64,000 bases of DNA from Lepidodermella squamata (Eukaryota > Animalia > Gastrotricha). The DNA is taken from contig JBLDXI010000060.1 in assembly GCA_047495785.1 (NCBI GenBank), positions 62,001 to 126,000 on the forward strand, in the 5' to 3' direction. A program made the translations under genes and the position numbers. Of this stretch, positions 21,739 to 63,897 are shown one piece after another. How positions within the stretch are numbered: position 1 is the stretch's first letter; each line of letters begins with the position of its first letter. The notes below the pieces were generated by a model. The model was given only the letters and a program-made list of their open reading frames with translations, searched no databases and was not told the origin of the DNA.

Positions 21739-22929
21739 ATGTATCTGACCTATTTCGCTTTAGGTATTTTCGCTGCCAGCAGCGCTTCAGAAGTCGATCC
21801 CCACAAATTCGTGCCCAAGGACGCTCAACTGCGAAAGATCTTCGTCGAAAAATGCAGCTTACGCGAAATCTCTCGCCATTCAATTCAAGCCCGTGAGCCA
21901 ACAGTGATTCAGCTCGCCTTCAAACCGTTCAGATTCCAGAAGCTTGAAGATGTCGAGGAGGTTTTGTCTATGCTAATCGAGCTTCGCATGTCATGGCGAC
22001 ACCCGTGCGTATCTTGGAACATCAGCGACTGGGATGGCATGAAATCATTTGAAATGCAAGAATTCGAGTCCTGGCTCCCGATGCTTTACATTGTGAACGG
22101 AGCCGAATCTTTGTCGCTGGACCAGCTGACCTCCGAGAGGCAATACATTCGCTACAGCTACGATAGCGAAATTTCTGTAACCGTTTACGGCATGACAACA
22201 ACGCACTGCGCTTTAAAGTGAGTCGCCTCGCATTTTTTTGCAATTTCGAACCTTCTCATCATTTCTAGTTTGGAAAATTTCCCGTACGATGTTCAGAACT
22301 GCCCGATTCACATTGAATCTTGGCTGAATACAAACAGCATACGCTTTGAATTGGTAGATGCAATTGTTATGGAGGATGAAACAAAGCCGTTCATGTCTCA
22401 AGTTTCAGCTTGGAGCTTTCTGGGGGTCTCGACAAATCTATCAGGAGTGTCATATCCTGATTCACCAACCAAGATATATCACAGAGCGACTTATACCTTC
22501 AAGTTCGAGAGGCGCCCGAACTTATATGTTGTCAACATATTTTTCCCCTGTACGTGCTTGATCACTCTACTTTTCGGGGCGGTGTTTATGCCTCCTGAGG
22601 CTAATGACAGACCATCGTATTGCGTTTCTGTAGTTCTCGCCTACTCATTCTACCAAGCGTCTATCAGCGAAATGATCCCGAAAACCAGCCAAGTGCCATG
22701 GGCGCTCATTTTTCTAGCCAGCCAAATGGGCGCTGGAGTGCTATGCACCCTCTACACATTGGTCGCAACTTATATGTCGTCGATGAAATTATTCAACCGA
22801 AGAGCGAATTTGTCCATTAAATTGAATTGCTCTCTCGTTAGATTTATCGATTTCTGCTTTTTCGCTATCGTTGCTTTTGGTCTGTTCGTAATTGATATGT
22901 TTATCTTTGTGAAAATTCGGAAATGCTAG
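21739..22929 (+). CDS. Divergent Cys-loop ligand-gated ion channel subunit 1 (exons 21739-22217, 22269-22929)
   Basis: Signal peptide, W.HP..W, WLP, spliced Cys-loop CALNLENFPYDVQNC (C-x13-C), ESW loop B, RRP pre-M1, four TM helices. Confidence 0.92.
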
Positions 22930-22977
22930 TTATGGACGATGATAACTCAAATATTTCTCTTCATTTTTAATAAAAAA

Positions 22978-24158
22978 ATGCTCTGGAATATCCCAATAAT
23001 TTACATTTATGCTGTGATTCTTCAAGCTCTCTGCGAGGACTCATGGCTGCCCAAAGATGCTCAGCTAAGGAAACTGTTCATCCAGAAATGTGGAGTCACC
23101 GAAAAATCCCGCCATAGCGCTGAATTTCGGGACCCTGTCAAACTTTCGTTGACATTCAAGCCATTCCGATTCATTGAGCTACAAGAAGTGGAAGAGACAT
23201 TCGCTGTAATGGCTGAACTATATCTATCCTGGTACCATCCCTGCGTTCATTGGAACAAAACTGAATGGGGTGAATATAAATCATTCGAGCTAGCGGCAAC
23301 AGACACTTGGATGCCCCCGATGCAAGTTGTGAATGCAGCTCGCACTACGCAAATCGATCATCTCATGTCATCAAGGCAATATGTCCGATATAGCCACGAC
23401 GGCCAGTTAACTACAACGCTTTCTGGAGCTTTCGAAGTATACTGCCCTTTGAAGTAAGTATCATGTGAAACTTTAGCATTGGTCTAACTAATTTTTCTAT
23501 GTTAAGCCTTGAGAAATTCCCGGCTGACACTCAGCACTGCGACATAATGATCGAGTCATGGCTCAATAACAATAGCGTTCACTTCGAGTTCAATCCTAAT
23601 GACACGATTTTGGACAACGACGAAGACGCGCCATTTATCAGCAAATCTAGCGCGTGGCGATTCGTCGAAGTTACCGCGAGCTTTCTGCCAGCGAATTACC
23701 CGGATGACCCTCTGAAGTTCTACCATCGCCTGACTTATACGTTCAAGATAAGCAGGCGCCCAGCTCTCTATATTCTCAACATATTCCTACCCTGCATTGG
23801 TTTGATGCTTCTAATGTTCGGTTCGTATTTCATCCCACCCGACTCGCCTGATCGGCCAGTTTTCTGTTGTACTGTTGTACTGGCTATTGCTGTCTATCAG
23901 TCCAATGTTAGCGAGATGATTCCAAGGACCAGTCAAATTCCATGGGCTCTGGTTTTCCTGGTAGTCCAGCTCGGCATCGGCATTGTCATGACTCTCTACA
24001 CTCTGCTAACATGCGATTTAGCCGGCAGGATGTCGTTCGAAGTTGGCAAACGCGGCGGAATGACAGCGATTCGTTTACTTGATATTGTTTTTTACGGAAG
24101 TGCCCTTTTAGTTATTGCGATTATTGATGCTTACATTATGGTAGAGATAATGCGCTGA
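22978..24158 (+). CDS. Cys-loop LGIC subunit 2 (exons 22978-23453, 23507-24158)
   Basis: Spliced CPLNLEKFPADTQHC; PDSPDRP M1-M2 linker; 4 TM. Confidence 0.92.
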
Positions 24159-24684
24159 GCGCATGGGGAAAAAATGGATTATTTGAATGTCGAAAAATCC
24201 TGGACAGAACTTGTTTCAGACAAAAGGTAATCTAGTGAACTCTCTTCACAGGCTCTGCGAAGCTTCAATTCTTTCCAAGGCCTTCCGCGGCCTTGTAAAT
24301 AGACATTGGAGCTTTTTGAGACATCAAATAATAAAACAAAGTGAAGTCAATCCATATTGAGATCCCACGAACCCAAGTCATGGTGGCAGCGAACTCATAC
24401 ATGGGGGGAATAAAGCGAAAGTGGAGAACTGAATTACTTCTTAAATTTGCCTCCAAGATAGTATCCTCTTTTGTCACGTGGTTTTGGTGACGTCGTTTGA
24501 TTTCAAAATAGAAGTATATCAAATTGTTAGTTTAATCGATTTCTGCAACGTCGCTGCTTTTGCTCTGTTCATTAAGTAGTAAGAAATTAAAACTAGCCAA
24601 AGAGAAATGAATATTTTAAAATCCGGAAAAGCCAGTGCGATGAGGTTTTTTTACACAGCGATTCTCTCTTCAGTTAATAAAAAA

Positions 24685-25860
24685 ATGTTTGCGAAATTTC
24701 CAATATTTCTGATTTGTGGCGCAGCGATAACTTGTGCAGAAGAGTCATGGCGGCCTAAAGACGCCCAGTTGAGGGCTTTTTTCATCGAAAAATGCGGGGT
24801 TTCGGAAAATGCACGTCACAGTGCGAATTTTCGCGACACAGTCAGAGTTAACATGATTTTCAGGCCGTTTCGATTCATCGAACTGCAGGAGGTCCAAGAA
24901 GCATTCGCGGTTATGGCCGAGCTATATCTATTTTGGAACCATCCATGCGTTCGCTGGAACAAAACGGAATGGGAAGATGCGAAATCATTTGAAGTCAACG
25001 CAGAAGATTCATGGTTACCACCTCTTCGAGTTGTTAACGCAGCTCGCAAGCCTCAGATGGATGACCTCATGTCATCGAGGCAATACGTGAGATACAGCCA
25101 TGACGGCGAAGTTACTACAACGCTTTCGGGGCCCTTTGAAGTCTACTGTCCCCTGAAGTAAGTAGAACTAGTTTCAACCCTATCAAAACCGGTCTTTATT
25201 TATTTCTATAGCTTGGAAAAATTTCCGGCTGACACTCAGCATTGTGACATTAGGATCGAGTCATGGATGAATAACAACAGCGTCAGTTTGATATATGACA
25301 CGAGTACTCCGATCATAGATAATGACGAACAGACTTCATTCATTAGCGAATCAAGCGCCTGGCGTTTGGACAATGTTAGCGCTGAATTGTTCGCTGCAAA
25401 TTACCCTGATGAACCTTTGAAGTACTATCACCGCGTGACATATACCTTCAAGATCAGCCGACGCCCAGCTCTTTACATCCTCAACATTTTCCTTCCATGT
25501 ATTGGGTTGATGCTTCTAATGTTCGGATCGGTTTTCATCCCGCCGGAATCTCCTGATCGGCCGGTATTCTGCTGCACTGTTGTACTGGCTATTGCTGTCT
25601 ATCAGTCCAATGTCAGCGAAATGATTCCTAAGACCAGTCAAATTCCATGGGCTCTCATTTTCTTGGTGGTTCAACTCGGCGTGGGCATTGTCATGACTCT
25701 CTACGCTCTGCTAACATGCGAACTGGCCGAAAGGCTTTCGTTCAAAATTCAAAACTGGGAGCTTAAAGCAATTCGTCTACTAGACATCATATTTTACGGA
25801 AGTGCACTTTTGGCCATTGTGATCATTGACACTTACATAATGGTAGAAATAATGTACTGA
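24685..25860 (+). CDS. Cys-loop LGIC subunit 3 (exons 24685-25157, 25212-25860)
   Basis: Close paralog of subunit 2 with the same intron and intact frames. Confidence 0.92.
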
Positions 25861-26387: not shown

Positions 26388-26806
26388 TTAAGTATGGCAA
26401 TGATTGGAGAAAGGTTCAACATTATAGGTTATAGCTAGAGGAAGCCTAACACGTTTAATAGTAACGATGCAACATGCAACAAGCCTCAAAGCTCGGACTT
26501 TCAGCCACGTATCTACAAACGATCTCTCGATCCCGCAGTAATCCTGATCAGTTGTGAATCCATCGGTGGAATATAAAGTTCAACTGGGGTTTAGTAGCAC
26601 GAATGTGGGTGAAACTGCCCACTGCCCAATCTGGGTGAACTGAATTGAATTTGCTGAGGCGCGGAAAGAAGCTCAGCTTTCACATAAAATTCAGACCACT
26701 CCAAAACCTGGAAAAACCTGATACAAATTATATACAAATCAATTTGACTGTGCCGTTCATTTTCATCCGCCTGAGCCAAATCAACGTACACAAGGCACAG
26801 CTATCC

Positions 26807-28355
26807 GTTATTGTATTGTATTGTATTTTATTTTCCAAATTCAATCAAAAATAATTACAGAATTTAAGGTTAACAATCATTGAGGAAAATGGATTAGAAT
26901 ACAAAGGGCAAGTTCTGCCACTTACATGTACCTACATTATAACATATTTTCATAGCGCGCAAAGTGGATAATGTTTACAGTATTGAGCTGCGAAGATGAC
27001 TAGAAAGATCACAAGTCATAAGCTTATGTTTGAAAATAACAGAATTATTAGAAGATACTATATCGTTTGACAATTTATTCCAGATCGGAGCTAGTCGGTT
27101 TACAAATGAGAAGCGATATTGGTCAGTTCTACAAGTTTGTATAACTAGTTTGAAGGAATGATTAGAACGAGTGAGGTTAGAATTAAATTTTAGCTTGTCA
27201 GAAAGATTACAGCGAACTTCATTTTTTATAATTTTGAACAGTAAGACCAGGTCAGCTCTCAAGCGTCGCAGTTCAAGAGATGGAATATGGAGCTGTTGTA
27301 GTCGTAAAGAGTATGAGGGTCGTGGATCAGATATTTTTCTACAGAATAGGCGACGAGTGAAGTAAGATTGAACTTTTTCGATTTTATTAATTAACGTTTT
27401 CGTGTAGGGAGACCAGATCGGGGACGCATAATCAAGAAGAGGTCGCACGTATACACAGTAGGCGCGAACTAGCGTAGCTTTATCGCGAGATTTGAAGGCA
27501 CGAAAGATAAGGTTGATACGTTGCATCGATTTCTTTATTATAGAGTCAATATGGTCACAAAAAGAGAGACGATCGTCAATCAGGACCCCTAGGTCCCTGA
27601 TGGAATTGACTTTACCAAGAGAGTGATCGCCAATTTTATATTCAGTTTTTGGATTATTTTTACCAAGATGTAAGCATGCACATTTCGAAACAGAGAGTTG
27701 AAGTTGCCAGCAGGAAGTCCAATCATTAACTCGATCGAGTGCACGATTCATTTCTATTGGACTAGCGTCATCATTCAAAAACATTATGTAGAGTTTACAG
27801 TCATCTGCGAATAAACGGATTTTAATGTTTCCCGGTAGATTCTCGTGAATGTCATTTATAAAAAGGAGGAAGAGAAGGGGCCCCAGGACAGAGCCCTGGG
27901 GAACCCCGCTAGTAACGTCGCATTTTTCACTCTTTTTCTTGTTGACAATAACAGACTGAGTTCGATCAAGCAAAAAATTTTCGATCCAACACAAAGGTTT
28001 GCCGGAGATTCCATAAGATTTAAGCAACGAGTTTTTTATGTGAAACCGTGTCGAAAGCCTTTGCGAAGTCCAGGTATATGATATCAACCAGCATATATTT
28101 GTCAAGCGCATACAACCAATCCACACTGCTTTCGAGTAGCTGGGTTAGAGTGGACTTTTTTGATACGAAGCCGTGCTGGAAAGGTGATATGATGTCTAAC
28201 CTTTGAAGATAAGATACTAGTTCATCGCGAATAATACGTTCAGCGATTCTGCAAGGCGTGCAGGTCAGAGATATTGGGCGATAATCAGACGCGTTGTGAG
28301 AAGCACCTTTTTTAGCGATTGGGGTAACAAAAGCCTCTTTCCACATATTGGGTAG
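26807..28355 (-). mobile_element. 5'-truncated non-LTR retrotransposon (CR1/L2-group LINE), RT domain with a frameshift
   Basis: YRPISLT, QHGF, YLDFAKAFDTV, GVPQGSVLGPLLFLLFIND, LFADD, DLGV, VRPLLDYASPIWSP. Frameshift near 28020-28040. The 3' end has AATAAA followed by an (ATACA)n tail near 26810-26832. Confidence 0.93.
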
Positions 28356-29020: not shown

Positions 29021-30211
29021 ATGCAAGTCGAACATCTCATTCTGTTTTCTTCTGTTTTAAGACTTTCCTCAGCGATATTTGCTCCACCTGATGAAGCATT
29101 GAGGCAACACTTTGAAAAAGAATGCAGCCTCAATTCTAAATTTCGTCCGCTTGAGAGTTTCAACAAATCAATCGCCGTAGACGTGCAGTTCATCCCTGTT
29201 CGCTTGGTCGAGCTCAACATTCCCGAGGAGCGATTCTCGGTTATGATGACAGTCAACTTTTTATGGAAACATCCTTGTGTTCAGTGGAACGCAACGGACT
29301 GGGACGAAGTGGACTTCTTCTTCGTTGAATCGCATTCTACTTGGCACCCGGATGTGTATATCGCCAATGGCTACGACGAAGTCACATTCAAAAACATTTT
29401 CAAAGATGACGAAAAGGTGTTTTTCAACAGTAACGGCCAAGTAATACTAGGGCCTCTCGGTCTTTTTTCAGTTTACTGCAACTTTGAGTGAGTTTTAGTT
29501 TTACTCAAACCTTCAAGGCTTATTCATCTTGTTTTGAACAGCGTAGAAAAATTTCCGTTTGACAAGCAAGTTTGTGCTGTTGATGTTGAATCGTGGCATA
29601 GTAATAAGACATTGACATTGACGGCTTATGTAAAAACGGTGATACAACAGGCTGATAACTGGCCTTTCGTCGCATCGAAATCGGTTTGGCAACTAACTGG
29701 TTTACAGACGAAAAACAGGACATTAAAATATGACGACATCATCTCACCCAACTATTTCCATCGTGCCAGCGTCGAATTCAGTTTCACACGCAAACCAACC
29801 AGCTACATTCTGAATATATTCCTGCCGAGTTTCAGCCTATCAATTGTTCTCTTAGGTTTCATTTTCATGGAACCAGGAGCGCCCGATAGACCAATGTATT
29901 GCGTGACTATCCTGCTAGCGTTTTCCGTACTCCAATCGTCTATTATCGATTTGATCCCGAGTTCCAGTGTCATACCCTACGCTGTGTGGATTGTGACTGT
30001 CAATTACATAGCTGCAATTTCATGCACGCTGTATTCATTGGTAGTTTGTTACCTGGCATCTCAAACAAGCCCGCTGTATTCAAGTCGACCGAAGTGGATT
30101 GAAATACCCATTGATAGCTTCATTCGCAGAATAGATGCTGTTTTCATATCTGCGGCAGCGAGTACTCTGGTGATTGCCGATTTTTATTTCTTAGCTAGAA
30201 TTCTTGAATAA
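29021..30211 (+). CDS. Cys-loop LGIC subunit 4 (exons 29021-29487, 29542-30211)
   Basis: WHPD loop A, spliced CNFDVEKFPFDKQVC, APDRP linker, 4 TM. Confidence 0.92.
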
Positions 30212-31390: not shown

Positions 31391-31674
31391 TTGTGCATCT
31401 GGGGAAAGGTATTTGCGAACCACTGCCCTAAACAGTTATGCGAATCCCCTTCATAAGTCACTTTCCTTAACGCAATACATATCATTATAGGGCGACTTTG
31501 CAGTCATGTGATCAAGGGCAAAGTCCGCATATTTGTTTCCGGTATTTGTCGCGCAGCCGCGCGGTCGTTGTAGTGGGGCGGTCGTGTGAAAACAGAGGTC
31601 ACCGTGCAGTATATCCCCATTCCCCATCCGCCCAAGGAGCGGCTCTCCGTTATGATGGCAGTGAATTTCTTATA

Positions 31675-31815
31675 ATTTAGCCGGCAGAATGCCGTTCGAA
31701 GTAGGGAAACGCGGAATGACAGCGATTTGTTTGCTCGATATTGTTTTTTACGGAAGTGCCCTTCTAGCTATTGCGAATATTTATTCTTACATCATGGTAG
31801 AGATAATAAGCTGAG
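31675..31815 (+). pseudogene. Relic 3' end (M4) of a subunit-2-like LGIC gene
   Basis: Sequence matches 24016-24158 with indels. The following intergenic DNA resembles 24159-24685. Confidence 0.8.
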
Positions 31816-33313: not shown

Positions 33314-33525
33314 GCCTGAAAATGAGAAAGTTGTCGATAAAAAGATGTCATAGAATTGAAACAACGAAGGTTCGTCAGTCATCCGAACTTTGTTTAGTTG
33401 ATGTATCTTGAGTTGAAATCCTAGATCAAAGTAGGACCGCGGATTTGGTTGGGATTTGACTGAGCTCACCGTACAAACCGATGGAACTGGGAGGGATGAT
33501 CCCTACCATCTCTAGCGGTACTTCC

Positions 33526-47864: not shown

Positions 47865-47967
47865 GATGCACTTATCCGCAATCTTGATTGCATTTTTATA
47901 TGCACCGTTTGTTTTGCTGTTCTTCGTGGTTGATTCCGTATTACCCGGCCGCATGCTATCTCAGTGA
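47865..47967 (+). pseudogene. Relic M4 exon end of a subunit-9-like gene
   Basis: ATCCGCAATCTTGATTGCATTTTTATATGCACCGTTTG...GGCCGCATGCTATCT matches 45677-45766 with indels. Confidence 0.75.
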
Positions 47968-52161: not shown

Positions 52162-52708
52162 TCTCTTAGTGACTGCTGGCTAATCTCTCATGTTAGTTAT
52201 GGTAGTTTGTTATTAGGTACAACCCATATTAATCTCTTATCGTTATTTCATTGTTATTCATCAGAACAACCAACGACCAAGAAGCAAGCGATAACGACCA
52301 ACGACCCCACAAACAATCGAGGAAATACGAGTCAGTGTTATATCAGTGGAAGATCCTCACATAATAAATACGTAATTAATGGTGAAATGATTTAAAAATG
52401 AGTATTTTCAAAATTACAGGTGAAAATAGCCCTGCTGAAAATTTCCACATTCCTGCTCATCTGATTGTTCCATTGTCAGACCCCTTAGAGAAAATAAATC
52501 CGAAATTACATTAGTTACAGTTTGGATTCATATATTTTTCTTGGCGTAATATTTTGAATGGAATCCGACTTACATTAAATCTCTACTTTTGCGTCATCCC
52601 GGAGTGAAAGGCAGCAAATTTGACCAGCTGCGCGCATGAAGCGTGACTGTCTCAAATTTTTCCGCCGACATCTCTCATGCATGCTCAGTATAACTGCCAC
52701 ACGTGAAA

Positions 52709-54312
52709 ATGTTTCGTGCTAGCGCAGCAGCTCGTTGTCGTTGTTGTGTCTTCCTATTTTGCTTAGTTACTTTTGCGCTCATTGCTTTCATCAACCGAAA
52801 CGATCGGCCGCAAAACTTTGGAAATGAACCGCAAAAGCCGTCCATCTTAAATGGAATTTCCTCTGAAAATCTGATGAAACTGCCCGATACTATTGCTAAC
52901 TTCTGGAATGAACCGAATCGACTGCCGAGCTACGTTAAGGAGGGCATAAAACATGTTATTAAGTCACCATACAGCATGATGTACCGGCAGTTTTCGAGAG
53001 CTGCAATCAAGCATGTTGGAGATGCCGACACCTTACATCGTGCTATTGTACGGTTGTTCGATCCACCCACCGAAAATTGGCTAAACAATTTGAAGAATGA
53101 GCAAAGAAGTCTCAATGTTGTTCTTCTGGGCGAATCCACGTCTGCTAATCGGGTAATTTAATGTGAAGTCTTCGAATTCGATTTATATGCTTTCATTCTC
53201 AGGGTGGGAAACCGGTTCATGTCGATTATCTGGTTGGCTGGCTCAACAAGACTCTCGAACCTCTTGGTTTCCATGCTAAAGCTGAGAATTGGGCTCTCGG
53301 AGCAACAAACAGCGGGTTTTTCTCATACTGCGCCGATCAGTTTTTCAATCCGAAAGATTTCGATATCGCCTTAATCCAATTCACGAGAAACCCAGAAACT
53401 AAGGAAGAATTCAGTGCACTAATAGCTGATTTACGCTACAAAAATCCTGACTTACACATCATCATTGTCGATTTCCCGAATATTCGCGACACTTTCCAGC
53501 CAGATGAATTGCGAGAAAAGCCAAAATTGATGAACCTACCCATCCATATCGACGTCGCTAGATGCATGGATGTTACCGTTATCGGCTCGGAAGAATTTCT
53601 GACTGATGAGAAAAAATGGACGAAAACTGAGACAGAGTTGAAAGAGCTTGATCATATCTTCCAGTACTACATCTCACAGGTTGACTTCAAACATGCTGGT
53701 CCCCCGGTTCATATCATGGTTACGGAACACATCATCAGCTACCTTAAACAATCACTACGGCAACTGCTCGAAACTGATTTATACCCGTTGCAGAAACAGG
53801 TCGAGAAATCGAAGAGAAATTATCATTACGAATGTCATTTGACTCATATGGAACATGAGGGTCGTTCGAAAGAGAACCTAGTTCCTTTAGAAACCGAAAC
53901 CGAAAAGGATAGTATCGACTTCCTAAATTGCTGGTTGATTGAACATGAGAACACGCTGGAATTTGAATTTTCAGAATTCAACACCGATATTACAACATGT
54001 TACCTCCCTCGAATTCTCATTTCTTACGGTCGCTGGAATTACGAGTGTGTAGCTGAGGGTGGCCACTTCAACATCGCTTACACCTTCAAAATGGTAGATG
54101 GGAAAGAATACGAGGCGAATTACGATGTTGATATGTACACAATTTTTCCGTTCGTACATTCTGTTATTACGACGCCAGTGGATGCGCATAGAAAAGTTCC
54201 GTGTTTTTCGGTTGCTAATGATTTAGTGTCCGTCCGCGTAGTTCTGACCAACCACTGCTCAAACATATGCGACTTGGCTGTTTATTCAGTGACTGTTGCT
54301 TTTAAAGAATAA
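52709..54312 (+). CDS. SGNH/GDSL-hydrolase-like protein 1, type II anchor (exons 52709-53152, 53203-54312)
   Basis: Block I VLLGESTS, block II NWALGATNS, block V DFKH. Phase-0 50-bp intron. N-terminal hydrophobic anchor. Confidence 0.78.
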
Positions 54313-54385
54313 ATATTGCGGGGATCAGAGTCCTTTCTTGATGCACGTGTTTATCGCAATTCTCCATACCAATTCATTTGGAAAA

Positions 54386-55839
54386 ATGAGAATTTACGTT
54401 ATAACCTGTTTAATTGCCAATCTTTACGGGAGCTCTGCCGTGAAGCTTCCTAATTATGTAGTTGAAGGACTGGAGACAATTGTCAACACCCCATACAGTG
54501 CGATTTACAGTCAATTCAACGAAAAAGCTCTCGCGCATTGGGGAGAACAAAACTCACTGCATCACATTTTTGTCAGACTTTTCGATCCACCTAAAGAAAA
54601 CTGGCTGCAAAATTTGAATAATGAAAACCGAACGTTGCGATTCCTGACTCTCGGGGAGTCCACATCTTCCCATTACGTTAGTTTCCCATGTAACACGATC
54701 GATTCGCTATGTCTTATTTCCTTTAGAAACAAGACGGATATCTTGGCAGAGTTGCGACCTGGTTGAACGAAACCCTCAAGCCGATGGGTATTTATGTCTA
54801 CCATGAAAACTGGGCAATGGGCGGGACTGGAGGGCCGTTCTACGGCCAATGTGCTCATTCAATGATCGACCTGACGCGTTTCGACGTAGTCAGCCTTCAG
54901 TTTTCATCACACGGCGAATCAGATGGGGACATGAGTTTTACAATCGAACGGATGCAAGCCGCGAACCCACGAATTCATGTTATCATTGTCGACTTCGCTT
55001 CCGCGAGCAATTTACTTGCAGATGAATCATTCTATGCGGAAGCTGAGCTGTATAACAACTTTCGCAAACACGTAAAACCGGCTAAAGATCATGACGTTAC
55101 ATTGATAGGCCTACCTAAATTCATGTGTAGTAACAATTCTTGGCCGAAAACGCAGGAAGAACTCGATGAGAAGGAATATATCCTGGATTACTACGTATCC
55201 GAATATGATTTCGTTCACGCTGGTTATCGGCATCATGCAATGATAAGTGAACATATCGTATACTACCTTAAGAAATCGCTTAGAAAGCTTCTTTCAAATG
55301 GAGTCTACCCTGCCCAAGTCAACGTAAAACCGAATGAATATGTCTTCGAGTGTAAACTCAACCATACAACGCATGAAAACAGGATAATGGACACCCTGAA
55401 ACCGACGACGAATTGCGAGATGAGTGGCCTCGATTTTTTGAGATCATACACTGTCCCTTTCGATGAAAGCCTCGAATTCAACATCACGTTGCAGAATCAA
55501 AGGGTGATGACGTGCTATCTGCCGCGTTTGGGCATCGCCTATGGAAATAAGGAAGGTGATTGTGGCCTTGCAAGTGGCTCGATTTTGTTGGACTATCGTA
55601 TGGAGATGGTCGATAAGAAGGTTTATGATAACACTGATTACGAAGTCGAAATTAGCCCTGAAGATTTTCCTTTCAATCCTTATGCGAAGATGATGCCATT
55701 AGACGCGCATAAACAAGTTCCTTGCTACATTACAGGCTCTATTAAATCTTTGCTGGTAACGGTGACTAATAGAAATGCTGAAAAATGTCCGATGTCCGTC
55801 TATGCTATCACAGTTGCTTTCAAAATAACTCCTGAATAA
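54386..55839 (+). CDS. SGNH-hydrolase-like protein 2, signal peptide (exons 54386-54676, 54727-55839)
   Basis: LTLGESTS, NWAMGGTG, DFVH. Same intron position as its paralogs. Confidence 0.78.
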
Positions 55840-55915
55840 ACATGAGCTTATTTGCGCACGTGAATTTCGACAGGACTGAATGAGAGAGATAATTACGCTT
55901 GCGACACTTTCTCAG

Positions 55916-57494
55916 ATGGTTAGGAATTTTCTCGTACTTTTAAGGAGGCTGGTCCTCTTCCTCATTTTTCTATCTGGCCTCTACCTATGCCTGGCGTTCA
56001 TGGCCCACAGCTATGGGACGAAAATATTACCTCATATCGACGTTGTAGATCGCTTTGTTCCTGAACTACCGATTCCTAATTTTCACGTTTTCGAAAAAGA
56101 AAAGCCGAAACCCCCACTGCCTGAGTACGCAATCGAAGGCTTGCGAATGCTTGCAAACACGCCTCAAAGAATGACCTACAGCCAATTCGACAAAAAATCC
56201 GTGGTTCACACTGGCGAGCAAGAGACCTTCCACAGATTACTCGTGAATCTATTCGACCCTCCAATGGAAAACTGGCTCGAAAATTTGAAGAATGAAAATC
56301 GAGGACTCAAGATTGGCGTAGTTGGAGAGTCAACTTCGAAGCACTTTGTAAGGTGATTTCATGTTGAGTTACAGGTTTTCATCTCAATCCTCATAACAGA
56401 GATACAATGGCTATGTCTGGATGGTGAGTGAATGGTTCAACAGGACACTGTACCAAATGGGCTTTGAAGTGACTATGGAGAACTGGGCGATCGGCGGCAC
56501 TGGTAGTGGGTTCTTCGCAATGTGTGGCGATGAGATGCTCGACTACACTCGATTCGACATCCTATTCGTTCAATTTTCGCTTCACGAAGAGACTGTCTAC
56601 GAATTCGAAACTCTGATACGAGAGATGAGGTGGCATAACCCTAAACTGCATGTCGTGGTCATTGATTTCGCGGATGTGAAAGCCCTCCTAAGACAGGCCG
56701 ATGTACCTCATCGCCGTGAAAATTTCGAAAATCATATCATCTCAGCGAAACGACTGAATGTTACCCTGATTGCGCTGCCAGAGCTTCTGTGTCCGCAAGA
56801 CACGTGTGTGAAGACTCAGGATCAGTTAGACCAGGCCTCGGATGTTGGGGATTACTACATCTCAAAAGACAACAATCATGCAGGTATGCCTGCAAATCAC
56901 TTGGTTGCCGAGAACATTATCGCTTACTTCAAAACGTCCATCAATCAATTGCTACAATCGAATGAATATCCGCCGCCAATGCCTCGAAGAGAGCCGGCAA
57001 AGAGATACTTTGACTGCAGCTTGTCTCACGAGGAAATGGAAAAGCGTACCCTGAACGATTTGATTGCGACGAGGAACGATGTAGATAGGGATGCCATCGA
57101 CTACGTGTCATGCTACGTTATTGACCATGAGGATTATTTGGAATTCGACCTCAGGAAATGGGAAAAGGGTCTTCGAACTTGTAAACTGCCGTTAATCGCG
57201 ATTTCCTACGGTGACGAGGACCCTGGCGAGGGACCTGAAAGTGGATATTTCGAAGTTAGCTATAAACTGAGACTCACAACAGGGCAGGAGTACTCCTCGT
57301 CTCGGAATCTAGAGATTAACCCACAATTTCCGTTCTACCATATCTCATTAGGAATGGACCCGGTCGACAATTTGCAAGAAGTTGCTTGCTTCAATACAAC
57401 TGACATTGCGTCGATGGTGGTGAAGGTTGGGAATTTTAACGAACAGGGATATCGAGTGGCCCTTTACTCTGTAACTGTTATTTTCGAGCTATGA
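55916..57494 (+). CDS. SGNH-hydrolase-like protein 3, type II anchor (exons 55916-56347, 56400-57494)
   Basis: GVVGESTS, NWAIGGTGS, DNNH. Same intron position. Confidence 0.78.
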
Positions 57495-57911: not shown

Positions 57912-59115
57912 ATGATTTTTTGTTCAGTCCTATTTTTGATGAGTGTCACCGCAATCGTCTCAGACGATTCATTTATGCCATATGAAGCACAGCTGAAGCA
58001 AAATATGTCGGAGAAATGTGGCATTCTAACGAATGCGAGACCTGTCAAGCGTGGCAACGAAACGGTAGAGGTAAGTGTTGTATTCAATCTCATCCGTTTG
58101 CGGCAGCTTGATGAACCCGAGGAGCGACTTGACGTATTGTTGTCTCTGGCTCTGACCTACCAACACCCGTGTGTTAGCTGGAATCCTGCAGATTGGGGGG
58201 ACACTAAATCCTTTCGAGTCGATACGGCTGATACTTGGAAGCCACCAATATTTCTCCAGAATGCAGACGCTGAGACGTCGATGAAAGATCCGTATGAAAA
58301 GTCTGTTGGCGTTGCATTCTTAAATGACAGCCGTGTGGCAATGATAACCACTGTCAGTCTGTCTACATTCTGCTTGCTAGAGTAAGCCAAACATTTCAAA
58401 GTAGACAATACTTTTCTATCTCACTTTATTCAGCCTCGAAAAATTTCCATTCGACACTCAAAGGTGTTCCGTAATTTTGGAGTCAAACGATGACTCTGGA
58501 ACTCTGAAATTGTCACTGTATCCTGGTTTGTCCGGCATCACAGCCACGGATGATGCGCCGTTCATTTCACCTACAGCTGTTTGGACATTGGTCAATTTCA
58601 GCGTGGGTGAAAGAAGTGTAACGTACGATGCCTATTCAAGCTACGATTCCTTATACTTCAATCGTGTCTTCTTCGAAATCGAAATCACCCGCAAACCTGG
58701 CACTTACGTCATCAACATTTTCTTCCCCAGCTTCGCCTTATCAGCCCTTCTATTCGGATCAGTTTTCATCGAGCCTGATTCGCCCGACCGAGCAATGTTT
58801 TGCGTCACCTTGCTTCTCTCATTTTCTGTCCTGCAATCAAGCATTGTTGGCATGATCCCAGAGTCGAGTGTCATGCCCTACGCACTGCTATTCGTCACAG
58901 CTCAGCTATCAGCTGGAATCATTCTTACATTCTACACTCTCCTCGCTGTTTGCTTAGTAGCTAAGCCGTGGTTTCAACGCGAAGTGTTCGCTAAGGTCAA
59001 ATATTTACCAACAATGGAGGTGATCAGAGTTTTTGATGCGATTTTCTTTGGAGGTGGCGGGTTGATGCTGTTCGCCATCGATTTATACATTTTCGGTCGA
59101 ATGATTTCGAAGTGA
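57912..59115 (+). CDS. Cys-loop LGIC subunit 11 (exons 57912-58381, 58434-59115)
   Basis: Spliced CLLDLEKFPFDTQRC; loop B ESN; SPDRA; 4 TM. Confidence 0.92.
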
Positions 59116-59248
59116 ACATGCAGATAATTTTTTCATCGTTTTTAATTAATCTGACTGGAAAATATGAAAAATAAACATCGCTGTGAATTCATTTCCCCAC
59201 TAAAGCATTCCTGGCGCTAGGCCATGCACTGATTCAATAGAAGAAAAT

Positions 59249-59975
59249 TTGTTACTTGAGTTCTTACTTCTTAACCTAATTTCGGTCATAGCTGCTCAAA
59301 ACTCGACGTACATTCCCTATGGCGAGCAATTGAAAAGCTATTTTGCTGACAAGTGTAGCATTCTGTCGAGCGCGCGCCCGGTGATAAACGGCAATGATAC
59401 CATCGAAGCAGTGAAGGAAGTAGGATTTTCGCTGAAAGGGGGATATCCAAAAAAATTGCAAAAAAAATAGCAAAATAAAATAGCTAGAATATGTATGAAA
59501 ATCGATGTTTTCTATAACGAAAATTGCGTATTTGTGGACTTGGACAATCTATCTACGATCACCTGTAAAGAAGGGGGGATGTTCCCTTTTCTTGGGGGCG
59601 CAACATTTCGCGAAGAGGGGGTAAACCCCCTCAACCCTCCCGCTACTTCCTACACTGCATCGAAGTGCAATTTGTTTTCAACCCGATGAGGCCCAGGGAG
59701 TTGGATGAGGTCGAGGAGAGGATAGACATCCTCATGTGTCTGATTTTCGGATACCAGCACCCATGCGTGAAGTGGAACCCCGGCGATTGGGGCTGGACTC
59801 GGGAATTCAGAATCAATCCAGCTGATACTTGGAAACCGTCAGTCTATCTGTTAAACGGCGATGCCTCTGTATCACTGCGGGACGCCATTTATGACGCTGT
59901 TGGCTTCAGTTTCAGATTTAATGGCGACGCCCATCTATCCACAACAATTAGCTTTTCTACATTCTGTTTGCTGGA
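59249..59975 (+). pseudogene. LGIC exon-1-only pseudogene (ATG lost, hAT insertion, exon 2 missing)
   Basis: Paralog of 62380-62849. Start mutated, interrupted at 59409-59657, and followed by a MITE and the duplication junction instead of exon 2. Confidence 0.88.
59409..59657. mobile_element. hAT-family MITE inserted in an LGIC exon
   Basis: TIRs CAGTGAAGGAAGTAG / CTACTTCCTACACTG. Perfect 8-bp TSD CATCGAAG. Empty site in the paralog near 62532. Confidence 0.95.
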
Positions 59976-60032
59976 GTGTGAGTTTGAAATGAATTCTCCA
60001 TCAACCCAATTTCATTTTTATTGGCATTTTAA

Positions 60033-60773
60033 CCCTTTCACGGCGGGAAGGACGATTTCGGAATTTCGACTTTGTAAATTCACAGAAATTTGAATTTGAT
60101 AAATTATTGATCGCCCTTTTGAGGAATATTGCTTTTCGATGTTAGCTACAAGGTGTTGAGACCAGGACACCGTTATCTTGCATGGTCAGGACATACTAGC
60201 AATTTGAAAATTTGAAATCTCATGGGTTCCTGAGTATTTATTGATCCAACAAAAAATACCACCGTGTCCGCCATAGTCTCATTGACCTCTGTGTAAATTT
60301 TGTTGAGTTGGAAATTAAAAATGACGACGCTATTGAAATTTAATCAAACCGGCCGAAATCGTCCTATCCGCCTGGACTTATACAGGCGGAGTGCTTGATT
60401 TTTTTGCTCTAAAACAGCTGCGCGTGAAAAATATGAAAAAGCTGAATACTGATTTCAACACTGATTTTGATACTGGTTTTAACGGGTTCCTTTTGATAAT
60501 GTCAGTAGGGGGAATCGTTAGGGACTTACACGAGAGCAATTTTGAGTCTGAAAATCTAATGTTCAAAGCATCTAAGACAGAAGCTAGGGTGTTTGAAAAA
60601 TCTGCTGAAATCAGCTGGGCGGATAGGACGATTTCGGCCAGTTTTTGTACAGCCTTAACGGTGATAGATAGAGATAAACGGGTTTCAAAATTGTGATCAG
60701 GGCCCTCTAAAACCCCTAGAACTGGTGTCAAATATTTTTTCTACCAGAGATAACTAATTCCGCCATGAAAGGG
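60033..60773. mobile_element. piggyBac-like MITE
   Basis: TTAA|CCCTTTCACGGCGG ... CCGCCATGAAAGGG|TTAA. Internal GGACGATTTCGG repeats. Truncated copy at 62907-63120. Confidence 0.88.
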
Positions 60774-61049: not shown

Positions 61050-62247
61050 ATGATTTTGTATTCACTTTTATTGCTGACGAGTGCCACAGGGATCTTTTCG
61101 GACGATTCATTTGTGCCATATGAAGCACAGCTGAATCAGAACTTATCTGATAAATGTGGATTTCCAACAAAGGCGAGGCCTGTGAAACGTGGCACTGATA
61201 CGGTGAAGCTAAGTATTATATTCAATCCCATCCGTATGCGGCAGCTCGACGAACGCGAGGAGCGGCTTGACATATTGCTCGCTTTTATTATTAATTATCA
61301 ACACCCGTGTGTGAGTTGGAACCCCCAAGATTGGGGAGACACTCGATTGTTTCGAGTTGATACGGCTGACACTTGGAAACCACCATTATTTCTCCAGAAT
61401 GCAGATTCCGAGACGTCGATGAAAGATCCGTATGAAAAGTCTACTGGCGTCAATTTCGCGGACACCGGCTTAGTGTCAATGGTTACCACTGTCAGTGTGT
61501 CTACATTCTGCTTGCTAGAGTAAGCTAAAACATGTTTATTGACGTTCTTCCTCCGCCTCTATTTTATCCAGCCTCGAGAAATTTCCTTTTGACACTCAAA
61601 AGTGCCCAGTAATTTTGGAGTCCAACGAAGACTCTAACTTGACCAGATTAACTCTGTATGCAAATCTTTCTGGCATCACAGCCACAGAAGATGCGCCGTT
61701 TATTTCGCCAACGGCTGTTTGGGAATTGGTCAGTTTCAGCTTGGGTGAAAGAAGTGTAACGTACGCTGCGTATGGAGACGCTGTTTCGTTCAGTCGTGTA
61801 TTTTTTGAAATCGAAATCAGCCGCAAGCCCAGCTCTTTCGTCGTCAACATTTTCTTCCCCAGCTTCGCCTTATCAGCCCTGCTATTTGGATCAGTTTTCA
61901 TCGAGCCTGGTTCGCCCGACCGAGCAATGTTTTGCGTCACCTTGCTTCTCTCATTTTCTGTCCTGCAATCAAGCATTGTTGGCATGATCCCAGAGTCGAG
62001 TGTCATGCCCTACGCTTTGCTATTCGTCGCAGCTCAGCTATCAGCTGGAATCATTCTTACATTCTACACTCTCCTCGCTGTTTGCTTGGTATCTAAGCCG
62101 TGGTTTCAACGCGAGGTGTTCGCCAAGGTCAAATATTTACCAACAATGGAGGTGATCAGAGTTTTTGATGCGATTTTCTATGGAGGTGGCGGGTTGATGC
62201 TGTTCGCCATCGATTTATACATTTTCGGTCGAATGGTCTCGAAGTGA
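61050..62247 (+). CDS. Cys-loop LGIC subunit 12 (exons 61050-61519, 61572-62247)
   Basis: Duplicate of subunit 11 with intact frames. Confidence 0.92.
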
Positions 62248-62379
62248 ACATGCTGATAAATTATTTCATTGTTTTTAATTAATCTGACTGGAAAATATGA
62301 AAAATAAACATCGCTGTGAATTCATTTCCTCTATAGAGCATTCCTGGCGCTAGGCCATGCACTGATTCAATAAAGGAAA

Positions 62380-63897
62380 ATGCTACTTCAACTCTTACTT
62401 CTTAACCTCGTTTCGGCCGTAACCGCGCAAAATTTGTCGTACGTTCCGTATGGCGAGCAATTAAAAAGCTATTTCGCTGACAAGTGTAGCATTCTGTCGA
62501 GCGCTCGCCCGGTGATAAACGGCAATGATACCATCGAAGTGCAATTTGTATTCAATCCGATGAGGCTCAGGGAGTTGAATGAGGTCGAGGAGAGGATAGA
62601 CATCCTCATGTGTCTGATTTACGGATATCAGCACCCATGCGTAAAGTGGAACCCCGGCGATTGGGGCTGGACTCGGGAATTCAGAATTGATGCAGCCGAG
62701 ACTTGGAAACCGTCAGTCTACTTGATAAACGGTGATGCCTCTGTCTCGCTGCGGGACGCCATTGATGACGCCGTTGGATACAGTTTCAGATTTAATGGCG
62801 ACGCCCATCTATCCACAACAATTAGCTTTTCTACATTCTGTTTGCTGGAGTGTGAGTTTGAAATGAATTCTCCATCAACCCAATTTCATTTTTATTGGCA
62901 TTTTAACCCTTTCACGGCGGGAAGGACGATTTCGGAATTTCGACTTTGTAAATTCACAGAAATTTGAATTTGATAAATTATTGATCGCCCTTTTGAGGAA
63001 TATTGCTTTTCGATGTTAGCTACAAGGTGTTGAGACCAGGACACCGTTATCTTGCATGGTCAGGACATACTAGCAATTTGAAAATTTGAAATCTCATGGG
63101 TTCCTGAGTATTTATTGATCGCCACCTATTTATCCACAACAGCAAGCTTTTCTACATTCTGTTTGCTGGAGTGAGTTTGAAATGAATTATCCCTTAGCCT
63201 AATTCAATTAATTTCAACCTAAAGCTTGACAAAATTCCCATTCGACACTCAAACATGCTCGATGATCTTCGAGTCGTTCGATAGCAATACAATTCAGCGG
63301 CTTAGGTTGCTGGAGTCAGCCTCTGGGATAACTGATTCAAAGGAGACGCCCTTCATCTCCCAAACATCTGTGTGGTCACTCGTTGGATTCACCCTTAACA
63401 ATTCCTCAGTCCGTTACGACTACATCCCAGGAAAAATGTTTGATCGAGTGTCTTTTCAAGTCATAGTCAGGCGTAAACCGGAATCGTATCTAATCAATAT
63501 CTTTTACCCTTCATTCGCGCTCTCAGGCCTGTTGTTTGGCTCGGCTTTGATCGCCCCAGATTCACCCGATCGAGCAACATTTTGCGTGACTCTGTTACTT
63601 GCTTTTTCTGTGCTTCAATCGAGTATTGTTGAGATGATCCCGAAATCTAGTGTCATTCCGTATGCTTTGGTATTTGTCACAGCTCAGCTTTCAGCTGGGA
63701 TACTCCTCACATTCTACTCACTTGCTACAGTTTGTATTGCGAGCCAGTCGAAGTTTAAGCGGAGAGTATTTAAGAATCGAAAATATTTGAATAGTGTGAC
63801 TCTGATAAGATTCATCGATTTAGTTGTCTTTTCAACAGGTGCCTTTTTGCTATTGTGGATTGATTGCTACGTTCTTGCACGAATGATGTGTAATTAA
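62380..63897 (+). CDS. Cys-loop LGIC subunit 13, possibly chimeric (exons 62380-62849, 63225-63897)
   Basis: Both exons are open. The 375-bp intron contains a MITE fragment and a second, diverged copy of the exon-1 end (63121-63170). The in-frame donor is the weaker GTGTGA. Confidence 0.68.

What the first reader, a model, noticed from the sequence alone, without database searches (positions are those of the whole stretch)
21739..63897. Large tandem array of atypical miniature Cys-loop channels: candidate independently evolved ionotropic chemoreceptor family
Seen: about 19 near-complete genes plus 3-4 relics in 42 kb, all on the + strand and about 370-390 aa long. Each has a signal peptide, a C-x13-C Cys-loop with FPxD and four TM helices. 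They fall into several sub-clades, and about a third are disabled. The acetylcholine-binding determinants are eroded: no vicinal Cys-Cys in loop C, loop-A Tyr replaced (IVN/VVN/IAN/LIN/LQN), loop-B Trp variable (ESW/ESL/ESY/ESF/ESN/ETW/EAM), and loop C variable in length and sequence (YPDDPLKFY, YVSDETY, YDAYSSYDSLYF, YPMVESKF). Known: cephalopod chemotactile receptors are tandemly arrayed nAChR-derived channels that lost the ACh site, and birth-and-death arrays typify sensory receptor families. Inference: this is a convergent lineage-specific sensory receptor expansion rather than a set of synaptic receptors, and heteropentamer assembly could give combinatorial ligand coding.
Basis: partly seen in the sequence, partly recalled or inferred. 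Interest (0 to 1): 0.92.

Follow-up and report, generated by a model that had tools for sequence, protein, structure and literature searches.

The report
Tandem array of small orphan nicotinic-like channels
An unidentified small-intron animal genome carries 19 head-to-tail genes (13 intact) for unusually small nicotinic-receptor-type ion channel subunits that have lost the acetylcholine site. This kind of expansion is already known in other invertebrates, and a smell or taste role is possible but untested.

Summary
There are 19 gene-sized units and 4 relics, all on the + strand. Each unit has two exons split by one 47-58 nt intron inside the Cys-loop, and the products are 367-389 aa. Thirteen units are intact, six are disabled, and they fall into three subclades.

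They are true Cys-loop channels on the nicotinic/5-HT3 side of the family. The closest solved structures are muscle alpha1 and alpha7 nAChR, Alpo4 and 5-HT3A; cephalopod chemotactile receptors score far lower.

- **Lost or changed:** the vicinal Cys pair, the loop-A Tyr and the loop-D Trp are gone, and the M3-M4 loop is only about 15-25 aa.
- **Pore:** it carries invariant -1' Asp, 0' Arg and 9' Leu.
- **Extra feature:** a second invariant Cys pair sits in the N-terminal part.

The 15 modelled genes form one clade. Their nearest relatives among about 15 billion proteins are 25-41% identical, unnamed, compact proteins from environmental eukaryote contigs. Duplicates are old and under purifying selection (dN/dS 0.08-0.33). 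No loop reaches dN/dS above 0.45, and no RNA data exist.

The "lineage-specific orphan, non-ACh channel expansion" reading is supported; the "chemoreceptor" reading is untested. This scan has already found similar arrays on other DNA of the same genome, and mollusc nAChR expansions are published. Moderate interest.

The parts
21709..22929 (+). g01, intact, 389 aa (exon 1 to 22217, exon 2 from 22269); subclade A
22978..24158 (+). g02, intact, 375 aa (exon 1 to 23453, exon 2 from 23507; an upstream ATG at 22939 is also possible); subclade A; starts 49 nt after the g01 stop
24685..25860 (+). g03, intact, 373 aa (25157/25212); subclade A
26666..26815 (+). relic of exon 1 (48% to g06 over 50 aa), next to the LINE fragment
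26975..28346 (-). LINE-type reverse transcriptase fragment inserted in the array (not part of the family)
   Evidence: Pfam RVT_1
29021..30211 (+). g04, intact, 378 aa (29487/29542); subclade C
31665..31808 (+). relic of the C-terminus (M4), 80% to g02
32137..33313 (+). g05, intact, 373 aa (32609/32665); subclade A; 84% identical to g03
33487..33873 (+). relic holding the M1-M2 loop to M4 only (aligned to g04 residues 260-376), 91% to g04
34539..35721 (+). g06, intact, 376 aa (35002/35055); subclade C
36270..37446 (+). g07, pseudogene with at least three frameshifts; g04-like; intron retained
37679..38846 (+). g08, frameshift near 38770 puts M4 out of frame (38154/38204); subclade C
39679..40864 (+). 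g09, intact, 378 aa (40145/40195); subclade B
41413..42629 (+). g10, pseudogene, one frameshift about 41995 just after the Cys-loop; g09-like
42958..44111 (+). g11, intact, 367 aa (43412/43463); subclade B
44561..45766 (+). g12, intact, 383 aa (45039/45094); subclade C
45883..47095 (+). g13, intact, 385 aa (46361/46417); subclade C; starts 117 nt after the g12 stop
47799..47961 (+). relic of the C-terminus with a frameshift
48108..49303 (+). g14, pseudogene, frameshift about 48548 at the end of exon 1; g13-like
49668..50871 (+). g15, weak signal peptide and a frameshift about 50800 at the start of M4 (50152/50200); subclade C
50980..57494 (.). interruption: one minus-strand 393-aa membrane protein gene (50980-52161) and three tandem + strand genes (52703-57494), none related to the channels
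57912..59115 (+). g16, intact, 383 aa (58381/58434); subclade B
59279..60246 (+). g17, fragment: exon 1 only, frameshifted, followed by a copy of the same insertion as in g19 (59977-60246, 100% identical)
61050..62247 (+). g18, intact, 381 aa (61519/61572); subclade B; 80% identical to g16
62380..63897 (+). g19 (labelled g20 in my scripts), 380 aa if the 375-nt intron 62850-63224 is spliced; the intron holds a ~320-nt insertion (62851-63170) with a ~60-nt duplicate of the exon-1 end; subclade B

Best explanation
**What it is.** This is an old, lineage-specific tandem expansion of orphan pentameric (Cys-loop) ion-channel subunits from the nicotinic/5-HT3 (cation-channel) side of the superfamily, reduced to a minimal form.

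**Anatomy of each subunit.**
- A signal peptide.
- A ~220-aa extracellular domain with the canonical Cys-loop and a second invariant Cys pair. One Cys lies at the end of the N-terminal helix, the other in the W-x-H-P-C motif of the beta2-beta3 loop.
- Four membrane helices.
- Only about 15-25 residues between M3 and M4, so the cytoplasmic domain of synaptic receptors is missing.

**Inferred mechanism.**
- Five subunits form a channel gated at the 9' Leu.
- The pore is lined by rings of -1' Asp and 20' Glu/Asp, so it most likely passes cations. The -2' Pro, normally seen in anion channels, leaves this open.
- The channel opens when a ligand other than acetylcholine binds at subunit interfaces.
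- The pocket has lost the vicinal Cys, the loop-A Tyr and the loop-D Trp. It keeps an invariant loop-B Glu, a loop-C Tyr and a beta10 Arg.
- Loops B, C, E and F differ strongly between paralogues. Different paralogues therefore probably differ in ligand preference.

**How the array grew.** It grew by stepwise tandem and block duplication from a founder that already had the Cys-loop intron, with ongoing loss (6 disabled copies, 4 relics) and occasional gene conversion.

**Shown versus inferred.** Shown: gene structure, family membership, motif states, monophyly, purifying selection, decay of some copies. Inferred: pentamer formation, cation selectivity, the extra disulfide, a non-ACh ligand. 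Unknown: tissue and ligand.
For: - **Family:** Pfam LBD plus TMD.
- **Gene models:** spliced models with C-x13-C, signal peptide and four TM peaks.
- **Closest solved structures:**
  - Window exon-1 profile: muscle alpha1 3e-13, Alpo4 3.5e-11.
  - Single exon 2: beta2, alpha4 and 5-HT3A at about 4e-13.
  - Profile of compact relatives: alpha7 5e-42, Alpo4 9e-41, 5-HT3A 7e-35.
- **Pocket and pore states per gene:** -1' D 15/15, 0' R 15/15, 9' L 15/15, -2' P 13/15, 20' E/D 13/15; loop-A Tyr 0/15, loop-D Trp 0/15, CC 0/15, loop-B Trp 9/15.
- **Extra Cys pair:** invariant in the window and shared by most compact relatives (A3).
- **Monophyly:** the window genes score 99; the compact family scores 96 apart from the alpha7-like sequences.
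- **Selection:** dN/dS 0.08-0.33, with dS mostly saturated.
- **Variability by region:** binding loops 21-36% identical, against 57-68% for the Cys-loop, M1, the M1-M2 loop and M2.
- **Intron:** the same Cys-loop intron is present in all copies and in one foreign contig, L006.
- **Decay and conversion:**
Against: - No transcript evidence at all, so even expression is unproven.
- Six of 19 copies are broken.
- The -2' Pro is an anion-channel feature, so selectivity is not settled.
- Named reference sequences were few (two alpha7-like, one GlyR-like, one cyanobacterial). Placement inside the superfamily therefore rests mainly on HMMER scores, not on a full phylogeny.
- The spliced full-length proteins could not be handed to the remote tools; the exons were searched apart.
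Confidence: 0.75

Rival explanations
1. **First reader's view.** The array is an independently evolved ionotropic chemoreceptor family. It would be expressed in sensory cells, with paralogues and heteromers tuned to different environmental or prey chemicals, analogous to cephalopod chemotactile receptors.
For: - The acetylcholine site is lost, and the pocket loops are the most variable parts.
- The array shows birth-and-death dynamics.
- The cytoplasmic domain used for synaptic anchoring is missing.
- The genes are not CR orthologues, so a sensory role would be convergent.
- Other arrays of minimal Cys-loop genes are noted in the same genome.
- There is a precedent of CRs derived from nAChRs (PMC11526382).
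Against: - There are no expression data.
- No sign of diversifying selection: loops reach dN/dS of at most 0.45, and in two pairs they are no faster than the scaffold.
- Duplicates are old, not recent bursts.
- An invariant charged and polar core (loop-B Glu, beta10 Arg, loop-C Tyr) does not resemble the very hydrophobic CR pocket.
- Similar expansions in bivalves have not been tied to chemosensation (PMC6896357).
Confidence: 0.25
2. **Internal signalling view.** The subunits form neuronal or muscular, possibly extrasynaptic, channels gated by endogenous small molecules other than acetylcholine, such as amines, choline or betaine-like compounds, protons or metal ions. This would resemble the diversified orphan LGC channels of nematodes.
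For: - Strong purifying selection on old paralogues.
- A conserved charged pocket core and gating elements.
- The nearest feature-space clusters in the ESM Atlas are nematode LBD proteins of 360-389 aa. This is a lead only.
- A near-invariant His in W-x-H-P-C.
Against: - No ligand evidence.
- No cytoplasmic domain for clustering.
- Nineteen copies in one array, plus other arrays, is many for internal signalling.
- The Atlas hits carry no alignment or E-value.
Confidence: 0.3
3. **Non-neuronal view.** The genes are stress, immune or environment-responsive nAChR-like genes, as proposed for the expanded intron-poor tandem nAChR genes of bivalves.
For: The genomic pattern is the same: tandem arrays, one or no intron, high sequence diversity, and some inactive copies (PMC6896357).
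Against: The organism is unidentified. Identity to a mollusc alpha7-like protein is only about 25% (P0172 to the relative P0013), and that protein falls outside the compact family in the tree. The bivalve proposal itself rests on expression profiles only.
Confidence: 0.15
4. **Decay view.** The array is largely a decaying remnant with no present function.
For: Six of 19 units are disabled, there are four relics, a LINE insertion and an insertion in the g19 intron.
Against: Thirteen open reading frames stay intact although dS is saturated, and dN/dS is 0.08-0.33 in both domains. All splice sites are kept.
Confidence: 0.05

Closest known systems
Expanded orphan nAChR-like receptors of lophotrochozoans (bivalve tandem, intron-poor nAChR genes, Jiao et al. 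2019, PMC6896357; Alvinella Alpo4, PMC10338036; mollusc clades with altered binding residues, PMC13174522)
   Same: - Nicotinic-branch Cys-loop subunits in same-strand tandem arrays.
- None or one intron, at a non-canonical place.
- Loss of the vicinal Cys and other agonist residues.
- Ligand unknown, and some dead copies.
- Alpo4 is among the best solved matches (3.5e-11 for exon 1; 9e-41 for the family profile).
   Different: - Only about 25% identity between named mollusc/bryozoan sequences and the nearest compact relative, P0013.
- Those sequences fall outside the compact clade.
- The M3-M4 loop is about 15-25 aa here, against about 100 aa in Alpo4.
- There is an extra invariant Cys pair.
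- The filter is P-D-R instead of G-E-K.
- The source organism is unknown, so lophotrochozoan origin is unproven.
Cephalopod chemotactile receptors (CRT1, CRB1; PDB 8eiz)
   Same: - Derived from nicotinic-type receptors.
- Acetylcholine site lost.
- Compact subunits in tandem clusters.
- CRs are described as non-selective cation channels, and a cation channel is predicted here.
   Different: - Not the same clade. CRB1 scores E 2e-3 against exon 1, while nAChR subunits score up to 1e-7 singly and 3e-13 with the profile.
- No diversifying selection was detected.
- The pocket core is charged or polar rather than strongly hydrophobic.
- Sensory expression and hydrophobic ligands are untested.
Vertebrate alpha7 / muscle alpha1 nAChR and 5-HT3A
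   Same: - Best-scoring solved structures.
- Same fold elements: Cys-loop FPFD, loop-B Trp in 9 of 15 genes, 9' Leu, 6' Thr, 13' Val, acidic -1' and 20' rings.
   Different: - No vicinal Cys, loop-A Tyr or loop-D Trp.
- -2' Pro.
- No MA-helix cytoplasmic domain.
- 367-389 aa, against about 450-600 aa.
Unnamed compact pLGICs on environmental eukaryote contigs (P0001-P0150; loci L001, L005, L006, L007)
   Same: - 370-410 aa with a short M3-M4 loop.
- The same extra Cys pair and a P-D/E-R motif.
- Tandem pairs on contigs.
- L006 shares the Cys-loop intron.
   Different: - 25-41% identity only.
- Most lack the intron or have another one.
- The window genes form their own clade.
Prokaryotic pLGICs (GLIC/ELIC type)
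   Same: Compact, with no cytoplasmic domain.
   Different: - The window proteins have the eukaryotic Cys-loop disulfide, signal peptides and spliceosomal introns.
- They score far better against nAChRs.
- A cyanobacterial homologue falls outside them, on the outgroup side of the tree.

Membership tests
Cys-loop / pentameric ligand-gated ion channel superfamily | Neur_chan_LBD plus Neur_chan_memb domains | tested here: met
   Pfam E 1e-6 to 4.5e-14 on exon products; hundreds of PDB pLGIC hits
Cys-loop / pentameric ligand-gated ion channel superfamily | C-x13-C loop with F-P-x-D, and four transmembrane helices | tested here: met
   Spliced models; hydropathy peaks for M1-M4 in all intact genes, M4 missing in g08 and g15
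Acetylcholine-gated nicotinic receptor (alpha-type subunit) | Vicinal Cys-Cys at the tip of loop C | tested here: not met
   0 of 15 genes
Acetylcholine-gated nicotinic receptor (alpha-type subunit) | Aromatic box: loop-A Tyr, loop-B Trp, loop-C Tyr pair, loop-D Trp | tested here: not met
   Loop-A Tyr 0/15 and loop-D Trp 0/15. Loop-B Trp 9/15. The second loop-C aromatic is kept, and the first is ambiguous by one position
Acetylcholine-gated nicotinic receptor (alpha-type subunit) | G-E-K/R selectivity filter and long M3-M4 cytoplasmic domain | tested here: not met
   P-D-R in 13/15, N-D-R and A-D-R in the other two; M3-M4 loop about 15-25 aa
Cephalopod chemotactile receptors | Membership of the CR clade within nAChRs | tested here: not met
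   CRB1 (8eiz) scores only E 2e-3 against exon 1. No CR appears in the top 60 of the profile and exon-2 searches, which nAChRs fill. No explicit tree with CR sequences could be built
Cephalopod chemotactile receptors | Diversifying selection on pocket residues | tested here: not met
   Pairwise dN/dS in the loops is 0.08-0.45. Pairwise averages are insensitive and dS is often saturated, so weak episodic selection is not excluded
Cephalopod chemotactile receptors | Expression in sensory cells and gating by poorly soluble environmental molecules | not testable with these tools
   No RNA run holds the locus; there is no functional assay
Lophotrochozoan expanded nAChR-like genes | Tandem arrays of intron-poor, divergent nAChR-like genes | tested here: met
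   19 units, one intron each, 27-84% pairwise identity; described pattern in PMC6896357
Lophotrochozoan expanded nAChR-like genes | Orthology to a described mollusc or annelid family, and a lophotrochozoan source | tested here: inconclusive
   The organism name is coded. The only named relatives are about 25% identical (to the compact relative P0013) and lie outside the compact clade. Reference sampling is too thin

The most novel reading that the evidence does not exclude
Outside cephalopods, a second animal lineage may have turned a nicotinic-type channel into a large family of peripheral ionotropic chemoreceptors. This compact, extra-disulfide, P-D-R subfamily is spread over several arrays in the genome and is also present in uncultured environmental animals. 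On this reading, paralogues and heteromers would encode ligand identity.
Probability: 0.22. Interest if true: 0.75.

Novelty: new variant of a known kind. Interest (0 to 1): 0.4.

Why it matters
It adds a well-resolved example to the growing picture that invertebrates repeatedly expand nicotinic-type channels that no longer bind acetylcholine and whose ligands are unknown.

This subfamily has several unusual traits:
- It is about 370-390 aa with almost no cytoplasmic loop, so it is small and has little cytoplasmic loop that would need trimming, which may make it a convenient target for expression and cryo-EM.
- It has a second conserved disulfide candidate.
- Its hybrid P-D-R filter could inform how charge selectivity is set.

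If the sensory idea were confirmed, it would be a second, independent origin of nAChR-derived chemoreceptors. As it stands, the find is a solid annotation and a lead, not a new principle.

Tried and rejected
1. **Word-indexed homology searches.** A search with a window exon found nothing. Searches with a relative and with a 40-sequence profile gave only three and ten hits. A full named-reference phylogeny could not be built for that reason.
2. **Naming the relatives.** Two cluster look-ups on 20 top relatives returned no names, only ENA and Logan environmental contigs.
3. **Identifying the organism.**
   - The run's organism name is coded.
   - The LINE RT gave mixed phyla in the Atlas.
   - The window has no tRNA or Rfam hit.
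   - A sample-accession paper search was blank.
   - A chaetognath origin was considered because of the operon-like spacing and tandem duplication (PMC12460157), but nothing ties the window to that phylum.
4. **Assembly error as the cause of the frameshifts.** Rejected for g07, g08 and g10, because an independent contig set shows no indels. Not checked for g14, g15 or g17.
5. **"Frozen pore" between g16 and g18 as selection.** Rejected in favour of gene conversion. The 90-100% identical tract runs on into the 3' flank at 87-94%, and synonymous divergence drops too.
6. **Prokaryote-derived compact channel.** Rejected, because the genes have a Cys-loop, signal peptides and introns, and they place with the nAChR side.
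7. **Structure prediction.** Not run. Spliced proteins cannot be given by reference, and the tool returns no coordinates to measure the Cys-Cys distance.
8. **Earlier findings by sequence.** A sequence look-up in this scan's earlier findings was blank.

Full report
**What is in the sequence**

On the + strand from 21.7 kb to the window end there are pairs of open reading frames of about 155-170 aa and 210-225 aa, separated by about 50 nt. Pfam assigns the first of each pair to the front half of Neur_chan_LBD. The second gets the back half of that domain plus Neur_chan_memb.

The two frames are joined by one intron of 47-58 nt. It has a GTAAGT/GTGAGT-type donor and a YAG acceptor, and it interrupts a codon after its second base, four residues into the Cys-loop. 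After splicing, every copy reads C-x13-C with F-P-x-D. The products are 367-389 aa, with an N-terminal hydrophobic signal and four hydrophobic peaks for M1-M4.

**Census**

Motif mapping and tblastn of the modelled proteins against the whole window give 19 gene-sized units and four short relics. Nothing related lies upstream of 21.7 kb or on the minus strand.

- Thirteen units are intact.
  - One of these, g19 at 62380-63897, is intact only if a 375-nt intron is removed.
  - That intron carries a ~320-nt insertion and a ~60-nt duplicate of the exon end.
- Six units are disabled.
  - g07 has several frameshifts.
  - g10 and g14 have one each.
  - g08 and g15 have a frameshift that throws M4 out of frame.
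  - g17 is an exon-1 fragment followed by a 100% identical copy of the g19 insertion.

Contigs assembled independently from the single public run that holds this locus match the window over 36200-42199 with no inserted or deleted letters. The shifts in g07, g08 and g10 are therefore not obviously assembly errors. That run is probably the source sample, so this is not independent biological support.

The one correction concerns the span. It also holds a minus-strand LINE reverse-transcriptase fragment (26975-28346) and a 6.5-kb block of four unrelated genes (50980-57494).

**What family it is**

- Single exons hit nAChR beta2 and alpha4 and 5-HT3A at about 4e-13, and muscle nAChR beta at 9e-8.
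- A profile of the window's exon 1 hits muscle alpha1 at 3e-13 and the orphan annelid receptor Alpo4 at 3.5e-11.
- Squid chemotactile receptor CRB1 reaches only 2e-3 with one exon 1. It is absent from the top 60 elsewhere.

So these are nicotinic-side Cys-loop subunits, and they are not members of the cephalopod CR clade.

I aligned the genes to a canonical alpha-type sequence with Y-x-C-C (Bugula "nAChRa7", P0160). The states are:

| Position | State in the 15 modelled genes |
|---|---|
| Vicinal Cys (loop C) | absent in 15/15 |
| Loop-A Tyr | replaced by V/I/A/Q in 15/15 |
| Loop-D Trp | absent in 15/15 |
| Loop-B Trp | kept in 9/15 |
| Loop-C aromatics | one kept; an invariant Tyr sits at, or one residue after, the other |
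| Pore -2' | Pro in 13/15 |
| Pore -1' | Asp in 15/15 |
| Pore 0' | Arg in 15/15 |
| Pore 6' | Thr in 14/15 |
| Pore 9' | Leu in 15/15 |
| Pore 13' | Val in 14/15 |
| Pore 20' | Glu/Asp in 13/15 |

From established selectivity work on alpha7, 5-HT3 and glycine receptors (my knowledge, not tested here), an acidic -1' ring predicts cation permeation. The -2' Pro is the anion-channel state, so I hold cation selectivity at about 70%.

The M3-M4 loop is about 15-25 residues, so the cytoplasmic domain is essentially missing.

Two further cysteines are invariant: one at the end of the N-terminal helix (E-x-C) and one in W-x-H-P-C of the beta2-beta3 loop. In solved nAChRs these two elements pack together as the main immunogenic region (my knowledge). 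A stapling disulfide is therefore plausible, but it is inferred.

**Relatives**

A word-indexed search of 5.8 billion clusters with a window exon found nothing. An exhaustive HMMER profile search of 1.84 billion representatives found 6443 pLGICs, but only 21 below 1e-30.

- The best relatives are 25-41% identical.
- Twenty of them were looked up, and all are unnamed sequences from ENA metagenome assemblies or Logan assemblies.
- Many are complete proteins of 370-410 aa with the same short M3-M4 loop, the same extra Cys pair and a P-D/E-R motif.
- On their contigs they also sit in tandem pairs.
- One Logan contig (L006) has the same phase-2 intron at the same place in the Cys-loop. The L001 and L005 genes do not.

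The tree held 65 sequences:

- The 15 window genes form one clade (SH-aLRT 99) with three subclades:
  - A: g01, g02, g03, g05.
  - B: g09, g11, g16, g18, g19.
  - C: g04, g06, g08, g12, g13, g15.
- The compact family as a whole (58 rows) is separated with support 96 from a group holding the Bugula and oyster alpha7-like proteins and two sequences with the vicinal Cys pair.

Reference sampling is thin, because the tools gave only four named sequences. This shows a distinct lineage-specific clade; it is not a full placement.

ESM Atlas feature searches point to nematode LBD proteins of 360-389 aa. That is a lead without an alignment.

**Evolutionary dynamics**

- Pairwise protein identity ranges from 27% to 84%.
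- Synonymous divergence is saturated for most pairs. For the youngest pairs it is 0.34-0.56.
- Where dN/dS is measurable it is 0.08-0.33, in both the extracellular and membrane halves.
- The array is therefore old and under purifying selection. It is not a recent burst.
- The pocket loops (E, F, C, B) are the least conserved segments at 21-36% mean identity. The beta2-beta3 loop, Cys-loop, M1, M1-M2 loop and M2 are at 57-68%.
- dN/dS restricted to the loops is 0.08-0.45 and never approaches 1. In two pairs the loops are no faster than the rest.

The strong diversifying selection reported for octopus CR pockets (PMC11526382) is therefore not evident here. Pairwise averages on saturated data are a weak test.

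The near-identity of the g16 and g18 membrane halves is gene conversion or a partial re-duplication. DNA identity jumps from about 75% to 90-100% at 58680, and it runs on into the 3' flank at 87-94%. Synonymous divergence falls from 0.56 to 0.10.

**How it most likely works**

- Shown: intact, constrained genes for complete secreted-type four-helix Cys-loop subunits, with a canonical 9' Leu gate and acidic rings.
- Inferred: the subunits assemble into pentamers, conduct cations, and are opened by something other than acetylcholine.
- An invariant loop-B Glu, a loop-C Tyr and a beta10 Arg form a common pocket core. The variable loops would tune specificity between paralogues.
- The lack of a cytoplasmic domain argues against classical synaptic clustering, but it does not say where the channels are.

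**Comparison with what is known**

Tandem, intron-poor, highly divergent nAChR-like genes are published for bivalves and other lophotrochozoans, with arrays of up to 12 genes and one-intron genes whose introns sit at novel positions (PMC6896357).

Orphan nicotinic-like receptors lacking the vicinal Cys, such as Alpo4, resisted ligand screening (PMC10338036). Mollusc-wide surveys list clades with substituted binding residues (PMC13174522).

Cephalopod CRs show that such receptors can become chemosensors (PMC11526382). The present array fits this known kind.

It differs in four ways:
- the almost absent cytoplasmic loop (about 100 aa in Alpo4);
- the extra Cys pair;
- the P-D-R filter;
- the Cys-loop intron.

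Its relatives are known only from unannotated environmental contigs.

This scan has already noted other arrays of minimal orphan Cys-loop genes on other pieces of the same genome. Follow-ups of a 15-gene and a 9-gene array reached the same kind of conclusion. I did not see their sequences, so I cannot say that they are the same subfamily.

**Limits**

- The organism is coded and could not be identified.
- No RNA data exist.
- Spliced proteins could only be analysed locally or exon by exon.
- No CR, ZAC, DEG-3 or LGC sequences were available for a tree.

**Verdict**

The reading as a lineage-specific orphan non-ACh channel expansion is supported, and the chemosensory and combinatorial-coding claims are untested. 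Interest is moderate (0.4), and I rate it a new variant of a known kind.

Noticed in passing
window 57700-59280 versus 60840-62420: g16 and g18 are about 75% identical in DNA through the 5' flank, exon 1, the intron and early exon 2. They are 90-100% identical from 58680 through M1-M4, and 87-94% in the 3' flank. Synonymous divergence drops from 0.56 to 0.10. This is a gene-conversion or partial re-duplication tract, not a pore frozen by selection alone.
   Followed up: yes
window 62851-63170 and 59977-60246: A ~320-nt insertion sits at the exon-1/intron junction of g19, flanked by a ~60-nt diverged duplicate of the exon end. Its first 270 nt are 100% identical to the sequence after the g17 fragment. 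The nature of the element (MITE or SINE-like?) was not determined.
   Followed up: partly
window 39200-39600: Word depth in the run's contigs rises to about 750-1900 against about 120 around it, and several contigs break here. This is a high-copy repeat between g08 and g09.
   Followed up: no
window 22929-22978; 45766-45883; 62247-62380: Stop-to-ATG spacers are only 49, 117 and 133 nt. An AATAAA abuts the g02 start codon, and TTTTCAG-like acceptors lie just upstream of some ATGs. The spacing is operon-like and compatible with polycistronic transcription or trans-splicing. It cannot be tested without RNA.
   Followed up: no
window 52703-57494: Three tandem + strand paralogous genes, each of two ORFs (about 150 aa, then 267, 358 and 357 aa), are embedded in the array. 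Pfam gave no significant hit even at E 0.1, so the SGNH-hydrolase idea noted for this window is not confirmed by sequence profiles.
   Followed up: partly
window 50980-52161 (minus strand): An intact 393-aa ORF with a signal peptide, a Cys-rich ectodomain and one hydrophobic segment. It has no Pfam family.
   Followed up: partly
window 15192-17368 and 18589-20849 (minus strand): Two paralogous multi-ORF genes for secreted Cys-rich proteins lie just upstream of the array. None of the five ORFs tested has a Pfam family.
   Followed up: partly
window 9838-12494 (minus strand): Two abutting large ORFs of 557 and 328 aa, with an acidic low-complexity N-terminus and a Cys/His-rich core. They may be a transposase-like gene, but no significant Pfam hit was found.
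   Followed up: partly
L001 6115-8388; L005 6419-9191: The environmental relatives of the family also occur as adjacent same-strand pairs. On L001 they lie near an ANF_receptor/7tm_3 gene and a hexosaminidase gene. Those contigs are 38% GC, against 42-44% in the window.
   Followed up: partly
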